Shown here: piece after piece, positions 22,864 through 31,700 of the stretch
Numbering within the stretch: position 1 is the first letter of the stretch
Layout: every line of letters begins with the position of its first letter
Assembly: GCA_004431415.1 (NCBI GenBank)
Contig: QPMI01000482.1
Location: forward strand, 62,001-126,000
Direction: 5' to 3'
DNA: 64,000 nt
Origin: Cyanophora paradoxa CCMP329
Taxonomy: Eukaryota > Plantae > Glaucophyta
Translations under genes and position numbers: made by a program
Notes under the pieces: model-generated
What the model saw: only the letters and a program-made list of their open reading frames with translations
The model's database searches: none
Told to the model about the DNA's origin: nothing

Positions 22864-24289
22864 ATTCTGGAGGGGAACCGCGGGTGGCAGGCTTGTCTGC
22901 TGTTTGTGTGCGATTTTTGAAGCGGGGCGGGACACGTCTCACGGGGTGCAGATCTCGGAGGGGGGCTTATTGTTACGGCAGGGGTGATTCCTGGCCAAAT
23001 CATTGAATCCGGCGCGCAAGTCTAAGACGTTCCGGCTACGTAGCCTACTGGCTAGGATTCTCGCCGTTCGTGACATTATGCGTAAGCGTGTCTGTGCGCG
23101 AGACACGCAACCAGTGACCGGCCGATTTTGCAATCGGCCACACGAAGGACGTGGCCATGCCAAGGATGGCGCCCAGCCTGGGCCTGGCAGGCCCGCCGGC
23201 GATCGCGAGCGCGCGCCCGCACTGCGGCAAGCTTAAGGGGAAATTTTTGAAACCTCATTAATTTGGCGGGGGCCGGCCGCGGGGCGCGCGCGGCCGGCGC
23301 GCGGCCCTGCTAGCGCTGGCAGAATTTGAGGCCGGTAATAGGGGTGGCATGCTTCATGATACTTCATCATATGAACTTCGGAAGCCTCGCGACCGGCGCC
23401 GAATCGGCAGCGATTCGGCGCCGGCGCGCATCGCGCGCGGTCCGACGGTCGACGACTCGACGTCCGCGGCCGCGGCCGGGCGCACGGCCGGGGCGGCGCC
23501 GGCGCCGGCGCCCGCGGCCGCGGCCGCGGCGCGTCGACGTCGGCGCGCGCGACGTCGACGTCGGATCCCGGAATCGTCCGGTCGGCGGCTTGCAATAATT
23601 TTTTATAATCTAATTGGCCAGTCGCGATCGGAAAAAACTCGCGACATGAACATGAATCCATATCCATATGAATGCATATGCAACTGCAAGAATTCGAATG
23701 CTGATCAGAGGCAGCTAGCGCGCGATATCGATCGCGATTCGCGATTCGCGATTCCGAAGTTCGCGAATCGCGATCCGGTGCCACCGTGGGCCGTGGGCCG
23801 TGGCACGCCGTGACGGTACCGGTGGCTCGGCGCCGTGCACTGCCAGTGCGGCAGTGCGGCGCCTGCGTGCCGCAGTGCACTGCGTGACAGTGCGTTACTG
23901 TGCGTGTAGCGTGCGCAGCGTTAGCCCGGGGCCCGGGGGTACTCGAGTACTACTAGGCTAGCCCCGTTACTCGGCCGCAGACTCCCCGCAGTCTCCGCGC
24001 CGTACGCGTACGTATATACCGTATTATGGCCGTATACGGTGCGGCGTACGCCGCGTACCGCGGTCACGGGTAAGTTGCCGCCGCCGGTAACGTTAACGGG
24101 CCTAGCGACCCTTCGAATTCGGGGCCATTTTCGGGCTACCGTAGTACTAGCGGCGCGCGGTGCCCCATGCATATGCCATCGTATGCTCCGTCGCCGCTGA
24201 GCGCGCGCGCAGGCGCAGGCCTAGGCCGAGTATCCGCTGCGCGGCGCAGCCCGGCGCAGATCTAGAGCGTCCGAGACTCGGCGAATGCG

Positions 24290-25515
24290 ATGGATATCGA
24301 TACACATACCAGCCGCGCCGGCGCGCGCAGCCAGCTGCAGACGAGCGCCTTTGCGCCGAACATGTACAGATTCTTCACCTCCTCGATCGCGAGCGCGGCC
24401 GACTTCGCGGGGACTCCGGGCTTCTACGACTACTTCAGCGAGCACTTGGCGAAGCAGTCGAGCCTGCGCGGGAACGCCGACAGCGTCACGCAGCTCGGCC
24501 TCGACTTCTTCTGGCTCGCCTTCGGCTTCCACGCCGCCGCCGCCGCCGCCTTCGCCCACCTCACCCTCTTCCACGGCAAGGAGTGGCGCCGCCTCCACGT
24601 GCTCACCCTCGCCATCGCCGCCACGGGCGCCGCCGCCTACTACGCGCTCGCCCGCGGCCAGGGCGCCGTCGCCCTCGCCAACGACGCCGGCACGGGCTTC
24701 CGCCTCTTCTGCTGGGCCCGCTACGTGCAGTGGGCCGCCACCGCCCCCGCCCTCGTCTACGTCCTGGGCCTCCTCGCCGGGGCCGCGCCGGGGGCCATCC
24801 TCGCCGGCGCCGCCGCGGCCGAGGCCTCCGTCGCGGGGCGGCTGTTCGGGGCCCTATCGGGCGGGGCCTCCCGCTGGGGCTGGTTCGCCTGCGCCTGCGC
24901 CGCCCAGCTCGCCCTCTTCGCCCTCCTCTTCGCCGCCTTCCGCCCCGCCGCCTACCGCCGCTCCCTCTCCCGCGGCCACGCCACCAGTGCGACCTCCCCG
25001 CCGCGCGCGGGCTATATCGCGACTCGGATTTTCCTGATTCGATTTGATTCGATCCCCGCGGGCGGCAGCGGTGGCGCTCTTCTTCACGCTGGCGGCGTGG
25101 CTCCCCGAGCTGGCGGCGTGGGTGGTCGGGGAGGGGAGGCGGGCGGCGACGGCGGACGCCGAGGTCCTCCTCTACGCCGTCCTCGACGTCCACAGGCAGC
25201 TCCTCTCCTGCGCCATCGTCCTCCTCTCCGAGCCCGTCCGCGGGCCCCTGGTGCCCCGCATCCCCCGGCCCCCGCTCCCTCGAATTCCTTTCTAGATCTG
25301 TTCGTCTTTTGAGCCCCCCTCCGGATCCGCAGCGTTCTCCCCGCTTTGGCGACGACTCCGGATCCGACTTCGAAGCATCCCCAGTACCCCAAGCTGGCGG
25401 CCTGTATGCGGAGCTGTTCGGGGCCGTGCTCTCCACCGCGCAGCTGAATTCAAAGGTTCGAATTCGCCCCCCTGCATGTACCCTACAATTTCCTACTCCG
25501 CCCCCCAAGACCTAG
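24290..25515 (+). CDS. Microbial (type-1) rhodopsin-fold protein lacking the retinal-binding lysine; may continue into the downstream lipase
   Basis: Seven hydrophobic segments. Helix B AAAYYALARGQG; helix C WARYVQWAATAPAL; helix E SRWGWF; helix F WLPELAAWVVGEG; helix G EVLLYAVLDVHRQLLSCAIVLL aligns without gaps to bacteriorhodopsin ETLLFMVLDVSAKVGFGLILL. Intron at 24987-25068. The C-terminal end is model-dependent. Confidence 0.85.
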
Positions 25516-25607
25516 AAAATCATGATCAACAGCTTGACTCAGTGACTCCCTGCCAGGGCGAGGGCAAGCCCGCCCCTCATGATCATGATCAGGGTCGCAC
25601 CCGCGAC

Positions 25608-28304
25608 ATGGGGGCGAAGCCCGCGGCGGCCGTATCCACCTCCCTCGGAAAAGACCTGAGCGCGTACGCCGTCCTTGCCAACATCCTTCGGGTACCCCTC
25701 CCACTCTCGAGCCCCCCCTCCCGGCCTCTCGTCACCACGTACCCCTGGCCTGCAGAACGCCAAGCACGGACTGGGTCCCTGGTCTCTCGTCGACGTCACG
25801 CTTGGCATCTTTATCTTGGCTCGGAAGGTAGCACGAGATGCACCCCATATGCATGGCCACCCCCTCCGCCTCTAGATCTCCCCCGCCGCGGCGCCTTTCT
25901 TGACTCTGTGTACATGTGTAGGGAAAGCAGCTGCCGGAGCGCCTCGAGGGGGCCCCCGTCGTCACCGACCGCCAGTATCTCACCAGGCGCGCTCCCTCCT
26001 CCCTTAGCTATAGGCCTTGATGTCCCCCTCCTAGGACTCCGTGCACGTGCCTCTGCAGGCTCTTCCCGCCCCCGCCTCGCTCTCTGACGCTGCCGCTCCG
26101 GATCCGGGCCGGGATACAGCGTGCAGTTTTTCTGGATGCTGGCCGGAGGTTGCTACAGGGACTTCCGCTACCTCCACGACGTGCGCCCCCGCCTCCGGAT
26201 CCCGCCTTGCCCCCCGCCTCTCCGGCCGCGGGATCCAATTTCCCCTTCCTTTCCCTCCCCCCGGCCCTGCGCAGTACTGTCCCGTTAGATTCGTGAGTTC
26301 GAACTGGGAGTCGGTACGTATATATACATCCGCTCTCCCGAGTACCCCTGCGCACGCCCTGCACATATGAACGTCATGATCAATTTGCAAGCTTCGATTT
26401 CTTATGTAGCCCGTGTCGCCGCAGGAGTTCCGCGAGCCGGCGTACTGCATCGCGGTGAACGAAGCGTCGCGGCAGGCACGCCCTCCTCTGGATCCATCCC
26501 CCCCCCCCCCCCCCCCCCCGCCCTCTCGAGCTCGAGCTCGCACACCTCCTGAGACCCCCCGCGCCGCGCCGCAGGTCATTCTCGCGATACGGTGCGGGGG
26601 GCATGTACAATCCGGGGCCTCCAATCGCGAGGCATTAATATTGACGTCCGGATCGATATCCCTGGCCCGCGCGCGCTCTTCGGGCACGCAGGGGTACGGA
26701 ATTAGCACACGACGTCCTCACAGATCTCGACTTCGAGCCCGTACCGTTCGGGGTAAGCGCTCGCCCGAGCTCGGGGCCGGGGGTGCATGCACGCGGACTG
26801 CGAGCCCTGACCGGGTACCGGTGGCAGCTGCAGGGGGGGCTGGCCCACGGGGGTATGCTGGAGTCGGCGCGGTACATGCGGCGCACGCTGGGGCCCGAGC
26901 TGGGCCGCCTCCTCGCCGAGAACCAGGGGTTCGGCCTCGCCATCTGCGGGCACTCGGTGCGAATCCCCTCCAGCTCTAGCTCTCTGGACCAGTTGATCGT
27001 TTCGGCGCGTCGAGCTCTGACGAGGCGGGGCCCGGGGTGTGGAAAGCTCGGGGCAGGGGTAGCGGCGCTGCTCACCGTGCTCTATCGGGACGAAGGCATC
27101 CCCGCTGTCTGCTACGCGTTTGCTACACCCGCCTGCGTCGCGCGCAACCTGGTACTCAGCATCGCTGCCGCGCCTCTCTTGCCCCGGCCGAGCGCCGGCC
27201 GCGGGCTGATGCAGGCGCCCGCAGTCCGAGTCGGTCGCCCCATATATTTCGAGCTTCGTGCTGGCAGACGACCTGGTACCCCCCCGCGCCGAATCCCGTC
27301 GGCCTTGTCTCGCACCTGCCGTGTGAGCGCCGTGCCAGGTGCCCCGCCTCTCGGCCGCCCACATCGAGGACCTGCGGCGCGACATCGCCCGGTCCCCCTG
27401 GCAGACCCTCCTCACCGAGGAGGTCCGAGCCCGTACCCCGGCCCCCTTCGAATTCGTTGCGCCTTCGACCTTCAGCTAACCCATTGCAACTCCCGCCCCT
27501 CCTCCCTCCCTCCCGCACGCACAGGAAGCGAAGGCTTTGGATGCGCTGGCTCGCTCCGTCGACCTCGAGGAGAAGGCACGCACCTCATGATCAGGGCCTC
27601 CCTTCCCTCTTTCATTTGCCATGTACCCCCGTCTGATTCCGTGCCCCAGCTGAAGGAGCAGGTGCGGGAGGCGACGGAGTCGGCGTCCGATCGTGAGTCG
27701 CCCGAGGGGCTGTTTGGCACCGGCCCCGCGCCGGCTCCGGCGCCGGCCCCAGAGGTCGAGCACGCGTACGAGCACGAGCGCGAGCGCCTGCGGAACCCGC
27801 TGCTCCGCTGCAAGCTGTACCCCCCGGGCGCCCTGCACTTCATCGTCCTCGAGACGGCCGATCGCGAGGCGCGTCCGCCCTGCGACTCTTCGAATTTGTG
27901 CCCCTGCGCATGCGCCCCCGGCCCCGTGATCGCCCCCTCGCGCAGCAGGCCGCGCCGGTCGAGCGGGGCCCGCGTTCGAGCCTCCTCGGGGCGGCGCCGG
28001 CCCTGCCCGTGGCCTCCCCGGCCTCCCCCCCGCCCGTTCGCGCGACAGCGATGCAGCGGGTCGGCCCCGAGTTCTTCGACCGGGTGCGCGCAACGGCATG
28101 ATATCGATCATATGCATCATGATCATGATCATAGCGTCGTGACCAGTCTGCCAGATGCTGCTCACGCGGACGATGGTCGACAACCACATGCCCGACAAGT
28201 ACACGATGGCTCTGGGCGACTTGCTCTGCCATCCCAACGACCTCCGCGCCCCCCGAAAATCGGGCGCTTCCCGGTTCTATGAGGCTATGGTATCTGCATT
28301 ATAG
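25608..28304 (+). CDS. Class-3 lipase (mono-/diacylglycerol lipase-like, Lipase3_N + Lipase_3)
   Basis: Spliced peptides LGPWSLVDVTLGIFILARK, PAYCIAVNEASRQ|VILAIRGT..DVLTD, AHGGMLESAR, nucleophile elbow ICGHS|LGAG, CYAFATPACV, DDL|VPRLS, KLYPPG, MVDNHMPDKY. The Ser-Asp-His triad appears intact. Stop TAG at 28302-28304. The start may instead be upstream, fused to the opsin. Confidence 0.88.
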
Positions 28305-28471
28305 ACGTATACGTAATTTATATAAGAATCAAACGCTTTTTAATTTACAAAGAACTATATAGCTGTACTAGTGTACCTATGGCATGGTAGGACACGGGCC
28401 CCCCGGGCCCATGGCCAGCCGCACAATTGCAAGAGACTGTCAGGGGCCTGAACATGGTGTACGTCAACATG

Positions 28472-28515
28472 AACACAGAATTTCAAAGAAGTATACTTCT
28501 TTGAAATTCTGTGTT
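28472..28515. repeat. Perfect 44-bp AT-rich palindrome between convergent gene ends
   Basis: aacacagaatttcaaagaagtatacttctttgaaattctgtgtt is its own reverse complement. Confidence 0.95.
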
Positions 28516-28748
28516 GCTATATATATATATGTATACCGCCGCCGGTATCGATCATAGTCTCTCTTCGAAATTAAATCTGTCTTCTGTTGATCGCGCCGCT
28601 TTGCTCTGATTGTAGTGATTGTGAGCAACTCGCTTTTTTGTTGAAAATTCCGAGTTCAGGGGACCGGGCATTCTTAGGCTTTAATTGATAGAAGTCCAGT
28701 CGTTCGTGAGGACCAGGGTGGGCTACAGCCGGCGAGAGCGGAAGGGGC

Positions 28749-31700
28749 TCAGGTGGAGGCGAACTGGGCCTGCCAGGCCTCGAAGCGGCGGAGCTCGGCG
28801 GGGGCGATCGAGGGCCGCGTCCGCGCCAGCGACTCCTCGAAGTCCCTCCGCGTGAGGCTGCCGCGCCGCGGCGGTCCACGTCGGGGTGGAGGGGAAAGGG
28901 AGGGGGGGGGGGGGGGGGGGGGGGCACGCGGAGGCGCGCACCTGACCTCGAGCTGCCCGGCGCCCTTCATCGCGCGGATCTCCGCGGGGGTCTTGTCCTG
29001 CGCGGGAGCCTCACGCCGGCCGGGGGCGCGGCGCCGCAAGGCGGGGGCGCGTGTGCGGGGCGCACGGCGGCGAGGCGGCGGACGGGGGCCATGCTGGCGT
29101 CCCGGCACACCGACCGGATGTCGCTGCCCCCGCCCCCGCCTCAGAGCGATCCGAGACCGGGGCGGGCGGGCGGGGCGGGGCGGGGCGCGCCTGCCGGAGT
29201 AGTTCTCGGTGGCGGCCGCGAGCTCCTCCAGCGAGACCGACGCTGCGCCGCCCGCCCGGGGTGAGGCGCCCCGCTCGGGAGGAGGGGGAGGGCGACTAGG
29301 CTCCCCGCACTCGAGGCGAAGGCACAGCAAAGCCCGCAAACAAGCGGCGGGGAAGGCGTATTCAAATTGGAAGCTGTAATCTGCTTCGTCCTATCGTTCA
29401 CGGCGAGGAGGGGGCGGGGCCGCACGGTCGAGGGGTACGGAGCGGAGGTGGATGGCGAACATCGCCCGCCGCGCCTGCCCCCGCCCCCCGTCAGCGCCCT
29501 GGGCCGGAGCCGGCGTGAAGGCGCGCGCGGGCCTCGGGGTCGGGCGGGGGGATGTAGATGCGCTTCTCGAGGCGGCGGCGCATCGCCTCGTCCAGGTCCC
29601 ACGGCGCGTTCGTCGTCCTGCCCCCGAGGAGGCGCACAGGGGCGTGAGGGGGGCGGAGGAGGGCGGGGCGGCGGCCCGGGCGCACGCGAGGACCATGACC
29701 ATACCGCCCCCGCCGGCGCCGCCGGCCGCCGCCGCCGTCGCGACGCCGTCGATCTGCTGCAGCAGCTCCGACTTGAACCGCCGGCTCGCCTGCGCCCGGG
29801 GGCCGGCTCGAGCGTGGCGCAGAGGCCCCCGGCGGGGCGGGGGCGGGCGGGGCGGGCCTCGTGCTCGTCGGCGGCGCCGCGGGTGGAGGCGAGGGCGTCG
29901 AGCTCGTCGAAGAAGACCACCGACGGGCTGCGAGGAGCCGGCCTCGAGGGGGGCGGCCCGGGCGGGGGGCGGGCGGAGCGGGGACGGCGGGCCTGTAGTG
30001 GCGGGCGAGGTTGAAGAGGGTCCGCACCAGCTTCTCCGACTCGCCCCGCTGCGCGCGGCTCGGGCGGGAGGCGGGGGGAAGAGGGCTCGGGGCGGGGAGG
30101 CGGGGGGAAGAGGGCTCGGGGCGGGAGGCGGGGGGAAGAGGGCTCGGGGCGGGGAGGCGGGGGGGAAGAGGGCTCGGGCGGGGAGGCGGGGGGAAGAGGG
30201 CTCGGGCGGGGAGGCGGGGGGAAGAGGGCTCGGGGCGGGGAGGCGGGGGGGAAGAGGGCTCGGGCGGGGAGGCGGGGGGAAGAGGGCTCGGGGCGGGGAG
30301 GCGGGGGGAAGAGGGCTCGGGGCGGGGAGGCGGGGGGGAAGAGGGCTCGGGGCGGGGAGGCGGGGGGGAAGAGGGCTCGGGGCGGGGAGGCGGGGAGGGC
30401 GCGCCCACTTGGAGACGAGGGAGGCGGCGGAGCAGGCGAAGAAGGTGGTGCCGCCCTGCAGCACGCGCCCCGGGCGTGGGCCCCGCCCCAGGCAAGCGAG
30501 CGGCGGGGGGCGCACCATGGAGGCCACTGCACGGGCCAGCAGCGTCTTGCCTGCCCCCGCCCTCGGCGGTGAGGGGGCGAGGGGGGGAGGAGAGCGGGGG
30601 GAGGGCCCCCGCACCCGTGCCCGGGGGCCCGAAGAGCAGGACGCCCTTCCAAGGCTCCCGGATGCCCGTGAAGTGCCTGTACCCCCGGCGTGGGGGGGGG
30701 GAAGCAGGGGGGGGGGCACGCTGGGCGCACTCGGGGATGATGAGGGGCAGGACCACCGCCTCGTTCAGGAGGCTGCCCGGGGGTACGGTGAACAAAAAGC
30801 TGGCAAGACGTACCCTCTGAGAGGTTGGAGGGGGTACCGCTTCGCGTCGGCGAGGCCGGCGATGTCGTCGAAGGTCACGCCGAGCGGCCTGTCGAGGATG
30901 TCCTGCGGGAGGACGGGATCAGCTGGGGGCACGCTGGACGGGAACGGGGTGCGGGCGCGCCCGCTCGATGGCCTCCACCAGGGCGGGGTCGTCGTTCCCG
31001 GAGTAGCTGGGCGCGGTTCAGACGGGGGAGGGGAGAGAAGGGGCGGGGCGCGCGGGCCGCACGGGGGCGGGGCGCCGGGGCGGCGACGAGTGGGGCGGCG
31101 GGGGCGGCGGAGGCGGTGGCGGCGGGGGGCCCCCCGGGCGCGCCCTGCGGGGCCAGGCTCCAGCCCCGCACCTCCAGCCGCGTCTTCCAGGAGGCCAGGC
31201 CCACCGGCCCTCGCAGCGCATCCCTGCCCACCGCCCCCGCCTCAGATCAGCGGGGGGTACGCTTGCGCGCTGCGGGGCGGCAAGGGGGGTACTCACACTT
31301 GGGGGACCTCGAGGTCCGAGAAGACCGGTTTGCCGTTGCTCACGAGCGTGACGCGGCGGCCGCGGACCTGCGGGGGTGGTGGGTGGGGAGGGAGAGAGGG
31401 GGGGTATTGACGGTGCTTTTTTTCTCAAAAGGGTCCCCGCTCGGTTTCGAACCTTGATCTCAACGGAGGCGCTCGCGTTGGGTGCCAGGCTCCGATCCTG
31501 CGCCTGGCCGTACATCGCCTGTACCCCGCCATCCACGTACCGCTCTGCCTTCCAAACCTGATCGGGTACGTCAAAATTCGGACGAGTCGCCGGGGCGGGG
31601 GTGGGGTGGACGGCCCTCGCCTTCTCTGAGGCGTTCATCGAGAGACAGATGAAGTTGGCGCTGGTACCCGTGATGCCATTGAAGCGGCTGTCGGGGACGC

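What the first reader, a model, noticed from the sequence alone, without database searches (positions are those of the whole stretch)
24290..28304. Candidate opsin-lipase fusion: a 7TM rhodopsin-fold domain spliceable in frame to a class-3 (DAG/MAG-type) lipase
Seen in sequence: after opsin helix G, a phase-0 GT donor (25251, alternative 25236) and a CAG acceptor (25332) lead to a 123-nt stop-free, ATG-less exon (25333-25455, RSPRFGDDSGSDFEASPVPQAGGLYAELFGAVLSTAQLNSK). Its GT donor (25456) can use CAG acceptors at 25532, 25556 or 25592, all in frame with the lipase N-terminus (..MGAKPAAAVSTSLGKDLSAYAVLANILR|NAKHGLGPWSL). The competing model uses an AAG acceptor at 25509 and stops at 25515, which leaves only 92 bp before the lipase ATG (25608) for both a 3'UTR and a promoter. 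Established: the enzyme-rhodopsin fusions I know carry histidine kinase, guanylyl cyclase or phosphodiesterase domains; I know of no lipase fusion. The C-terminus of the 7TM fold is cytoplasmic, which suits a membrane-acting lipase. Inference: this may be a membrane-tethered sensor-lipase for lipid signalling, perhaps with alternative splicing producing opsin-only and fused forms.
Basis: partly seen in the sequence, partly recalled or inferred. Interest (0 to 1): 0.88.

Follow-up and report, generated by a model that had tools for sequence, protein, structure and literature searches.

The report
Lysine-less opsin possibly fused to lipase
In the alga Cyanophora paradoxa, a rhodopsin-like membrane protein that cannot bind retinal lies directly upstream of a complete lipase gene, and sequence evidence (no RNA data could be had) gives about even odds that the two are spliced into one membrane-anchored lipase, an architecture not seen elsewhere.

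Summary

The window is Cyanophora paradoxa. The public Augustus model tig00020830_g14407.t1 (P0001, 660 aa) already makes this fusion. That model keeps one intron and stops early. My hand-curated model has 19 exons and codes 815 aa without a stop.

**For a real fusion**
- The 41-codon linker exon carries a motif (GGLYAELFGAVLS) that matches the region just upstream of the lipase core in the paralogous lipase P0152.
- This is the best match in all six frames of the 64-kb window (score 42; next best 29).
- No ATG in any frame lies between 24363 and 25405, so the motif can be translated only from the opsin start.
- The linker is flanked by strong splice sites (97th to 99th percentile).

**Against**
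- No RNA contig covers the gene.
- No other protein found combines the two domains.
- The downstream acceptors are mediocre.
- A methionine (25608) conserved in both lipase paralogs could be an independent start.

The opsin domain has Q in place of the Schiff-base lysine. It is a retinal-free (Rh-noK) 7TM domain, most likely an anchor and not a light sensor.

Odds: fused about 0.5, two genes about 0.35. This scan also noted the missing lysine on this same window (s1-513331).

The parts
24290..24986 (+). Opsin exon 1: N-terminal tail and helices A to E, ending in phase 1. The helix C motif reads RYVQW (BR D85 position is Q).
   Evidence: Pfam PF01036 E 2.3e-16. 100% identical to P0001 residues 1-232. 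GC3 is 0.97.
24987..25068 (+). Opsin intron 1 (82 nt, GT-AG).
   Evidence: tblastn of P0002, P0003, P0004 and P0159 jumps from 24988 to 25062-25080 with a change of frame. Splice sites shown.
25069..25250 (+). Opsin exon 2: helices F and G. Helix G reads LDVHRQ, so the Schiff-base lysine position is Q. Homology to other opsins ends at SEPVRGPL.
   Evidence: Alignments to PDB 6gyh and 5awz and to glaucophyte opsins. AF2 pLDDT is 82-98 over residues 61-290. GC3 is 1.0.
25251..25332 (+). Candidate intron 2 (82 nt). It contains the read-through stop TAG at 25293-25295 of the unspliced opsin-only model.
   Evidence: Donor at the 97th percentile and acceptor at the 98th. The read-through tail scores -1.25 bits per codon, which is intron-like. 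It has 6.1 AT-containing palindromic hexamers per 100 nt, like other introns.
25333..25455 (+). Linker exon (41 codons, phase 0 to 0, no in-frame ATG). The conserved motif lies at 25372-25434, with its core GGLYAELFGAVLS at 25396-25434.
   Evidence: BLASTP to lipase paralogue P0152 residues 579-599: E 5e-4. Best of about 104,000 six-frame positions in the window, score 42 against 29 for the next. Codon score is +0.05 per codon in frame and about -0.35 in the other two frames. AF2 predicts a helix at residues 317-330 with low confidence.
25456..25556 (+). Candidate intron 3. The donor is at 25456. The acceptor is uncertain: 25532 (77 nt), 25556 (101 nt) or 25592 (137 nt, the one used by public model P0001). 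It contains ATG 25476, which is in frame with the lipase.
   Evidence: Donor at the 99th percentile. Acceptors at the 65th, 71st and 36th percentile. The stretch 25456-25532 scores -0.7 to -0.8 bits per codon in all frames.
25557..25691 (+). Exon holding ATG 25608 (MGAKP...) and the first well-conserved lipase block (DLSAYAVLANILR). If the genes are separate, this is the first coding exon of the lipase.
   Evidence: BLASTP to P0152 residues 607-648: E 3e-6. P0152 has M-S-A-E-P at the same distance from the conserved block, give or take one residue.
25756..28304 (+). Lipase exons 5 to 19: 25756-25827, 25922-25986, 26120-26180, 26275-26313, 26425-26475, 26575-26591, 26692-26752, 26834-26956, 27047-27151, 27225-27275, 27339-27422, 27525-27575, 27650-27868, 27946-28083, 28155-28304 (stop TAG at 28302-28304). 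The nucleophile GHS|LGAG is split by the intron 26957-27046, which has an AAG acceptor. The Asp lies in DDL|VPRLS and the His in NHMPDKY.
   Evidence: Exon ends fixed by frame and by homologues P0152, P0153, P0155 and P0156. Pfam PF01764.
28323..28749 (-). 3' UTR of the convergent neighbour, a Vps4/katanin-like AAA ATPase. Its poly(A) site lies 19 nt from the lipase stop. This marks the downstream edge of the unit.
   Evidence: A run X9 contig ends at 28323 with an untemplated run of T. Pfam Vps4_C E 2.7e-6 on 28752-29339, minus strand.

Best explanation
This is one composite gene of Cyanophora paradoxa. The opsin ATG at 24290 opens a reading frame that runs through two opsin exons. It is spliced at 25250^25333 to a 41-codon linker exon, and from 25455 to an acceptor at 25532-25592, and it continues through 15 more exons of a complete class-3 lipase to TAG at 28304 (19 exons, about 815 aa).

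The N-terminal domain keeps the full seven-helix microbial-rhodopsin fold but has lost the retinal-binding lysine, so it is an Rh-noK type domain. It most likely serves as a polytopic membrane anchor that holds the lipase at the membrane face where the opsin C-terminus emerges. This parallels the way the four-helix N-terminal domain anchors animal sn-1 diacylglycerol lipases.

Shown here: the fold, the missing lysine, the intact catalytic Ser/Asp/His, an open frame over the whole path, and the homology of the linker to another lipase's N-terminal region. Inferred: that the splices are used, that the protein is made, where it is located (perhaps the cyanelle envelope, as reported for other Cyanophora opsins), and the anchor role.
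For: 1. The linker motif at 25372-25434 matches residues 579-599 of the paralogous lipase P0152. There it lies 36 aa upstream of the conserved lipase N-terminus and in the same order (BLASTP E 5e-4; collinear tblastn chain). It is the single best match in all six frames of the window, at 42 against 29 for the next best.
2. No ATG exists in any frame between 24363 and 25405. The motif can therefore be translated only from the opsin start.
3. Splice sites: donor 25251 at the 97th percentile, acceptor 25332 at the 98th, donor 25456 at the 99th. Candidate introns are 82 and 77-137 nt, and the genome mean is 86 bp (PMC6704402).
4. The unspliced opsin tail is intron-like (-1.25 bits per codon). It also lacks the ...SKL tail that P0002, P0151 and P0004 share.
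5. The full path is open, with 2448 nt and no internal stop.
6. Between the two coding parts, GC does not fall below 0.48 over 100 nt. The flanking intergenic regions fall to 0.29-0.35.
7. Relatives of this lipase family carry other N-terminal modules, for example a FYVE-like finger in P0156. Animal DAGL carries four TM helices (PMC2173631).
Against: - No RNA evidence. The two runs guessed to be RNA hold nothing of the gene, and the two runs that hold it are unspliced DNA.
- P0001 is an Augustus model with obvious errors. Its authors warn that tightly packed genes are hard to model in this genome.
- No other protein with PF01036 plus PF01764 was found.
- All other glaucophyte opsins end 12-40 aa after helix G.
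- The intron-3 acceptors are mediocre, and 25533-25607 has non-coding-like codon usage (-0.49 per codon).
- The linker's own codon score is borderline (+0.05).
- Met 25608 with the pattern M-x-A-x-P lies at the same place in both lipase paralogues, in a good start context. That fits an independent start.
Confidence: 0.5

Rival explanations
1. These are two separate, tightly packed genes that Augustus merged. The opsin-like gene ends at TAG 25293-25295 by read-through (about 308 aa). The lipase gene has its own promoter in the roughly 300 bp that follow and starts at ATG 25608 (or 25476). The linker motif would then be a conserved leader element, or a recently silenced remnant of a longer ancestral lipase N-terminus.
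For: - No RNA support for any junction.
- The fusion architecture is unique.
- Every other family member is opsin-only.
- M-x-A-x-P is conserved at Met 25608 in both lipase paralogues, with G at -3 and G at +4.
- Weak intron-3 acceptors and non-coding-like codon usage in 25533-25607.
- Mean intergenic distance is only 770 bp, UTRs overlap, and the genome's authors warn that their models need curation (PMC6704402).
Against: - The linker motif is conserved at the protein level with a paralogue whose catalytic part is only 68% identical. Neutral DNA of that age should be unrecognisable.
- The motif sits between a very strong acceptor and a very strong donor, like an internal exon.
- A strong in-phase donor lies exactly where opsin homology ends.
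- The read-through tail looks like an intron.
- No AT-rich trough of intergenic depth is present.
Confidence: 0.35
2. The linker exon is spliced to the opsin but only as its C-terminal tail. Either the AAG acceptor at 25509 gives T-stop at 25515, or intron 3 is retained and the frame runs to the same TAG. The lipase is made separately from ATG 25608. Opsin-only and fused isoforms might also coexist through alternative splicing.
For: The splice signals for opsin-to-linker are strong, while every acceptor after the linker is only middling. Acceptor 25509 scores 2.9, about the same as 25532 (3.5) and 25556 (4.1).
Against: - The 54-nt intron would be shorter than all 16 reference introns, which span 58-133 nt.
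- Only 92 bp would remain for a 3' end plus a promoter.
- The motif is homologous to a lipase N-terminal region and not to opsin tails. The apparent SKL likeness is at noise level.
- Six of the seven AG sites from 25532 to 25619 are in the lipase frame.
Confidence: 0.1
3. This is a true enzymerhodopsin, meaning a light-gated lipase in which retinal photoisomerisation in the 7TM domain controls the lipase.
For: Only the architecture, which resembles known rhodopsin-enzyme fusions with a cytoplasmic C-terminal enzyme.
Against: The Schiff-base lysine is Q, and the neighbouring residue is R, not K. The BR D85 position is Q and the BR Y185 position is E. Proteins of this kind (Rh-noK) are held not to bind retinal (PMC7714340).
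Confidence: 0.03

Closest known systems
Enzymerhodopsins (histidine-kinase rhodopsins, rhodopsin guanylyl cyclases, rhodopsin phosphodiesterases; PMC8575461)
   Same: An N-terminal microbial-rhodopsin fold followed, if the splices are used, on the same chain by a cytoplasmic enzyme domain.
   Different: There is no Schiff-base lysine, so no covalent retinal. The enzyme is a class-3 lipase, not a kinase, cyclase or phosphodiesterase. The fusion is not shown at the RNA or protein level.
Rh-noK: rhodopsin-like proteins without the retinal-binding lysine (yeast ORPs, nine of the 42 Guillardia theta genes; PMC7714340)
   Same: A complete Bac_rhodopsin fold with the lysine replaced. The function is presumably independent of light.
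   Different: The known Rh-noK proteins I found described are stand-alone. Here the domain may be joined to an enzyme, which would give a functional lead for this class.
Cyanophora and glaucophyte opsins ('cyanophopsins': opsin 2 = P0151/D1MER6, P0002, P0004, P0159)
   Same: These are the nearest relatives, at about 40-70% identity. They share the same fold and the same conserved blocks (LTLFHGKE, FYWARY, SRWGWF, SEPxxG).
   Different: Most keep the lysine (DVxxK) and end in ...SKL soon after helix G. This copy has Q at the lysine position, as does P0002, lacks the SKL tail, and is followed in frame by lipase exons.
sn-1 diacylglycerol lipases DAGL alpha and beta (PMC2173631)
   Same: A polytopic N-terminal membrane domain followed by a cytoplasmic Lipase_3 catalytic domain with a serine-lipase motif.
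   Different: The DAGL anchor has four helices and is unrelated to rhodopsins. Orthology of this lipase to DAGL was not tested. Its nearest database relatives are soluble-looking protist Lipase_3 proteins at 28-39% identity.
Paralogous Cyanophora lipase tig00000178_g12761 (P0152/P0160)
   Same: 68% identical over the part of the lipase that aligns (56% of the query; the P0152 model stops before the GHSLG nucleophile), and it shares the pre-catalytic motif GGWFNEIFGGVLS.
   Different: In its model, the motif is preceded by about 580 aa of Ala/Pro-rich low-complexity sequence with no TM helix and no opsin. That model is also an unchecked Augustus prediction, and I could not fetch its DNA.

Membership tests
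Microbial rhodopsin (Pfam PF01036, retinal-binding) | Seven-helix Bac_rhodopsin fold | tested here: met
   PF01036 E 3e-17 over residues 73-273. PDB hits 6gyh (E 5e-21) and 5awz cover residues 66-292. AF2 gives seven helices with pLDDT 82-98.
Microbial rhodopsin (Pfam PF01036, retinal-binding) | Schiff-base lysine in helix G (BR K216) | tested here: not met
   LDVHRQ aligns with LDIAAK of 6gyh and with DVITK, DVLSK and DVLTK of P0003, P0004 and P0159. The lysine column holds Q.
Microbial rhodopsin (Pfam PF01036, retinal-binding) | Carboxylate counterion in helix C (BR D85) and aromatic retinal pocket (BR Y185) | tested here: not met
   RYVQW places Q at the D85 position. AWLPELAAW aligns with SWIAYPVIW of opsin 2, which places E at the Y185 position. 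BR numbering is from established knowledge.
Enzymerhodopsin | Rhodopsin and enzyme domain on one polypeptide | tested here: inconclusive
   An open spliced path exists, and the linker homology argues for it. No transcript or protein evidence.
Enzymerhodopsin | Light control through bound retinal | tested here: not met
   The lysine is absent.
Rh-noK (lysine-less rhodopsin-like proteins) | Rhodopsin fold with the K216 position substituted | tested here: met
   Class as defined in PMC7714340.
Glaucophyte opsins (cyanophopsins) | Closest sequence relatives are glaucophyte opsins | tested here: met
   P0002 70%, P0003 51%, P0004 46%; the sources are Cyanophora and Cyanoptyche.
Glaucophyte opsins (cyanophopsins) | Short C-terminal tail ending in SKL | tested here: not met
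   The read-through tail ends in ...RIPF. The likeness of the linker to SKL tails is at noise level.
Class-3 lipase (Pfam PF01764) | Lipase_3 profile match | tested here: met
   E 6.5e-16 on P0001. The single exons also match.
Class-3 lipase (Pfam PF01764) | GxSxG nucleophile plus Asp and His of the triad | tested here: met
   GHS|LGAG spans the intron 26957-27046. DDL|VPRLS and NHMPDKY align with the same blocks in P0153, P0155 and P0156. The assignment of Asp and His as catalytic residues is by homology.
sn-1 diacylglycerol lipase (DAGL) | Orthology to DAGL alpha/beta and a four-helix N-terminal anchor | not tested
   No DAGL reference sequence was available to the tools. The resemblance is in architecture only (PMC2173631).

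The most novel reading that the evidence does not exclude
The fusion is real, and the lysine-less opsin domain is more than a passive anchor. It would work with the lipase in cis as a light-independent lipid-handling module, for example a scramblase or lipid-presenting groove (a scramblase activity is reported for a proteorhodopsin in the title of PMC10730872), or as a sensor of a non-retinal ligand. The site might be the cyanelle envelope. That would be the first enzyme fusion of an Rh-noK domain, and a Rosetta-stone clue to what retinal-free rhodopsins do.
Probability: 0.12. Interest if true: 0.85.

Novelty: new variant of a known kind. Interest (0 to 1): 0.55.

Why it matters
Rhodopsin-fold proteins that have lost the retinal lysine are common, at roughly 600 of 5,558 catalogued genes (PMC7714340), and their function is largely unknown. 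A natural fusion of such a domain to a lipase would tie the class to membrane-lipid metabolism. It would also add a fourth kind of enzyme partner, one not gated by light, to the rhodopsin-fusion repertoire.

In practical terms, the public Cyanophora model g14407 is wrong in at least two places. It keeps the intron inside GHSLG, and it lacks about 270 C-terminal residues, including the catalytic His. If the fusion proves false, this locus is a documented example of gene merging by Augustus in this compact genome.

Tried and rejected
- **RNA evidence.** The one run search and the one read-laying run gave DNA contigs only (X1, X2). The runs guessed to be RNA (X3, X9) hold only the neighbour's 3' end at 28312-28500.
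- **Linker as the ancestral opsin tail.** I asked whether the linker's end (...LNSK plus L from acceptor 25532) matches the ...SKL tail of the opsin family. A gapped scan of four opsin tails against all six frames does not place the linker among the top hits. Rejected as chance.
- **The APHDHD / APHGHD likeness upstream of Met 25608.** The top hit scores 44, but noise hits score 42. I did not use it.
- **P0152's 585-aa N-terminal region against the window**, with composition correction. No hit, so there is no sign of upstream lipase exons or of an opsin nested in a lipase intron.
- **DNA of the paralogous lipase locus.** Not on record.
- **Third homologue search**, with P0152 residues 575-797, looking for fragments of 123-390 aa. 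Nothing found.
- **Metagenome scans.** Opsin exon 1 gave no relative. Alignment A1 gave three distant rhodopsin loci (about 30% identity) with no lipase nearby.
- **GC troughs as gene-boundary markers.** Suggestive but not decisive, because troughs are rarer than genes.
- **TGTAA as a poly(A) signal.** Uninformative.
- **AF2 of public model P0001.** The opsin part is excellent. The linker and lipase are below pLDDT 55, so it says nothing about domain contacts.
- **ESM Atlas.** It only confirms class-3 lipase.
- **Joined models.** I sent no joined model of my own to any search or fold tool. In local scripts, exons were concatenated only to count frame and stops, and nothing was printed.
Full report
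**Source and status.** The window has 69.5% GC. Opsin exon 1 is 100% identical to residues 1-232 of a 660-aa protein, P0001. P0001 is EukProt's Cyanophora paradoxa model tig00020830_g14407.t1. That is a prediction and not evidence. The genome paper gives a mean intergenic distance of 770 bp and a mean intron of 86 bp, reports overlapping UTRs, and warns that the models need manual curation (PMC6704402). P0001 also has clear errors. It reads through the 90-nt intron that splits the nucleophile motif GHS|LGAG, and it runs past the donor at 27423 into a stop at 27477-27479, losing the catalytic His.

**Checking the observation.** Every coordinate holds.
- Exon 1 (24290-24986, phase 1) and exon 2 (25069-25250) together give a full microbial-rhodopsin fold. 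Pfam PF01036 scores E 3e-17. PDB relatives 6gyh and 5awz cover residues 66-292. AF2 gives seven helices at pLDDT 82-98.
- Homology to all other opsins stops at SEPVRGPL, which ends at 25250. A GT follows directly.
- The exon 25333-25455 is open and has no in-frame ATG. The GT at 25456 can reach AG sites at 25532, 25556 and 25592, all in the lipase frame.

**A corrected gene model.** I fixed exon ends by frame and by homology to the lipase paralogue P0152 and to the protist lipases P0153, P0155 and P0156. The result is 19 exons and 2448 nt with no internal stop, ending at TAG 28302-28304. The Ser (GHSLG), Asp (DDLVPRLS) and His (NHMPDKY) blocks are all present. At least two introns (starting at 25987 and 26476) use GC donors that homology requires, and one uses an AAG acceptor (27046). 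I concatenated exons only in a local script to count frame and stops. The only joined sequence used in any tool was the public model P0001, by its id.

**Is the linker a real coding exon?**
- *Splice signals.* A small matrix from 16 other introns of this locus places donor 25251 at the 97th percentile, acceptor 25332 at the 98th and donor 25456 at the 99th, among all GT/GC or AG sites in 24000-28400. The downstream acceptors are ordinary: 25532 at the 65th, 25556 at the 71st, 25592 at the 36th and 25509 at the 59th percentile.
- *Codon usage.* Codon usage trained on the lipase exons gives the linker +0.05 bits per codon in the proposed frame and about -0.35 in the other two. True exons, scored leave-one-out, give +0.10 to +0.84. 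Introns give -0.02 to -1.6. The linker is therefore borderline. The read-through opsin tail scores -1.25 per codon and looks like intron. The stretch 25533-25607 scores -0.49, which is also not exon-like.
- *Homology.* The decisive new fact comes from the second Cyanophora lipase, P0152 (tig00000178_g12761.t2), which is 68% identical over the part of the lipase that aligns. It carries GGWFNEIFGGVLS 36 residues upstream of its first conserved lipase block. The linker carries GGLYAELFGAVLS in the same order and at similar spacing. BLASTP gives E 5e-4 over 21 residues.
- *Is that match chance?* In an ungapped scan of all six frames of the 64-kb window, this is the top hit, at 42 against 29 for the next, with mean -17 and SD 8. 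I estimate the chance of such a hit falling within 300 nt upstream of the lipase, on the right strand, at about 1e-4. This rough figure comes from the tail of that distribution.
- *Is it a neutral relic?* The aligned lipase regions of the two paralogues are only 68% identical, so neutral DNA of that age should not be recognisable. The motif is therefore under constraint, most simply as protein.

**Why this argues for fusion.** Between 24363 and 25405 there is no ATG in any frame. The only ATGs upstream are the opsin start (24290), an in-frame Met at 24362, and an out-of-frame ATG at 24285. If the motif is translated, it must be translated from the opsin start through the two splices. The N-terminal 585 residues of P0152 have no counterpart anywhere in the window once composition is corrected. 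There is therefore no sign of other 5' lipase exons. The candidate introns (82 nt and 77-137 nt) are of normal size. Between the two coding parts GC never falls below 0.48 per 100 nt, which matches an ordinary lipase intron (0.47). The flanking intergenic regions at 23569-23734 and 28243-28713 fall to 0.35 and 0.29.

**Why it is not settled.**
- No RNA is available. Runs X1 and X2 carry the locus with its introns, so they are DNA. Runs X3 and X9, guessed to be RNA, carry only 28312-28500.
- Among the best 150 relatives of the opsin, out of 1.84 billion representatives, only P0001 continues into a lipase. Among lipase relatives, only P0001 carries PF01036.
- All other glaucophyte opsins, including transcript-derived ones (P0004, P0159, P0008), stop 12-40 residues after helix G.
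- Both lipase paralogues have a Met followed by x-A-x-P at 27 or 28 residues before the conserved ...ILR block. The Met at 25608 has G at -3 and G at +4. This would suit an independent start.
- P0152 is itself an unverified Augustus model, and I could not obtain its DNA. I cannot see whether its motif is an internal exon, and I cannot measure dN/dS.
- A constrained non-coding leader remains possible.

**What the 7TM domain is.** Helix G reads LDVHRQ where opsin 2 has DVITK and PDB 6gyh has DIAAK, so the Schiff-base lysine is Q. Helix C reads RYVQW (BR D85 position is Q), and the BR Y185 position is E. The closest paralogue, P0002, also has Q at the lysine position, with a K one residue earlier. 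This agrees with the scan's separate note s1-513331. The domain belongs with the lysine-less rhodopsin-like proteins (Rh-noK), which are thought to act without retinal (PMC7714340). A light-gated lipase is therefore very unlikely.

**How it would work.** If fused, the likeliest role of the 7TM domain is a polytopic anchor. That arrangement parallels animal DAGL alpha and beta, where four TM helices precede a Lipase_3 domain (PMC2173631). No relative of this lipase has a TM-like N-terminus by hydropathy, and one has a FYVE-like finger. Membrane-targeting modules thus seem to vary in this family. The motif itself is hydrophobic and aromatic, and AF2 makes it a helix, though at low confidence. 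It may be an interfacial helix. Other Cyanophora opsins are reported at the cyanelle envelope (PMC4510345). The location of this one is unknown.

**Verdict.** My odds are about 0.5 for a real fusion, 0.35 for two genes merged by the predictor, and 0.1 for the linker serving only as an opsin tail or for mixed isoforms. If real, the architecture is new, but the domain would not be a photoreceptor.

Noticed in passing
window 25987, 26476, 27576, 27869 (intron starts): Four of the 18 introns in my model start with GC, all in the form AG|GC[AG]CG[CT]. Two of them (25987 and 26476) are required by homology to P0152. That share is very high for GC-AG introns. Missed GC donors and AAG acceptors may explain some errors in the Augustus models.
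   Followed up: partly
window 24290-28304, introns against exons: AT-containing palindromic hexamers that look like restriction sites (GGATCC, GAATTC, TGATCA, AGATCT, CATATG, TCCGGA and others) occur at about 5.0 per 100 nt in introns and 1.6 per 100 nt in exons (my sums). This may relate to the scan's note s1-512784 on 6-bp inverted micro-duplications.
   Followed up: partly
proteins P0002, P0151, P0004, P0159 (relatives, not in the window): Glaucophyte opsins of this clade end in ...SKL (P0159 in ...SKLS), a conserved C-terminal tripeptide that resembles a PTS1 signal. That is odd for 7TM proteins reported at the cyanelle envelope. The window's copy lacks it.
   Followed up: no
protein P0002 (Cyanophora tig00020553_g10775.t1): The closest paralogue (70% identity) also has Q at the Schiff-base position, but it has a lysine one residue earlier (DVYKQ). 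This suggests a small glaucophyte subclade with a shifted or lost lysine.
   Followed up: no
window 26957-27046 and 27423-27479: The public model g14407.t1 keeps an in-frame 90-nt intron inside the GHSLG nucleophile motif. It also reads through the donor at 27423 into a stop, and so omits about 270 C-terminal residues, including the catalytic His.
   Followed up: yes
window 28323 (minus strand) and 28752-30795 (minus strand): The convergent neighbour is a Vps4/katanin-like AAA ATPase (Vps4_C, E 2.7e-6). A contig of run X9 ends at 28323 with an untemplated run of T, which places this gene's poly(A) site 19 nt from the lipase stop. The two 3' UTRs must therefore overlap.
   Followed up: partly
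window 24285: An out-of-frame ATG lies 5 nt upstream of the opsin ATG and opens a 250-codon alternative frame (24285-25037). Which one is used depends on the transcription start, which is unknown.
   Followed up: no
proteins P0005-P0008 (P0006 = Cyanophora tig00001206_g7510.t1): A second glaucophyte opsin subfamily has long N-terminal extensions and tails ending in ...STIYxGVLE. The tail faintly resembles the linker and P0152 motif (..F/Y-G-x-VL-S/E), with scores too weak to count. P0006 is probably the protein in the scan's note s1-512823.
   Followed up: no
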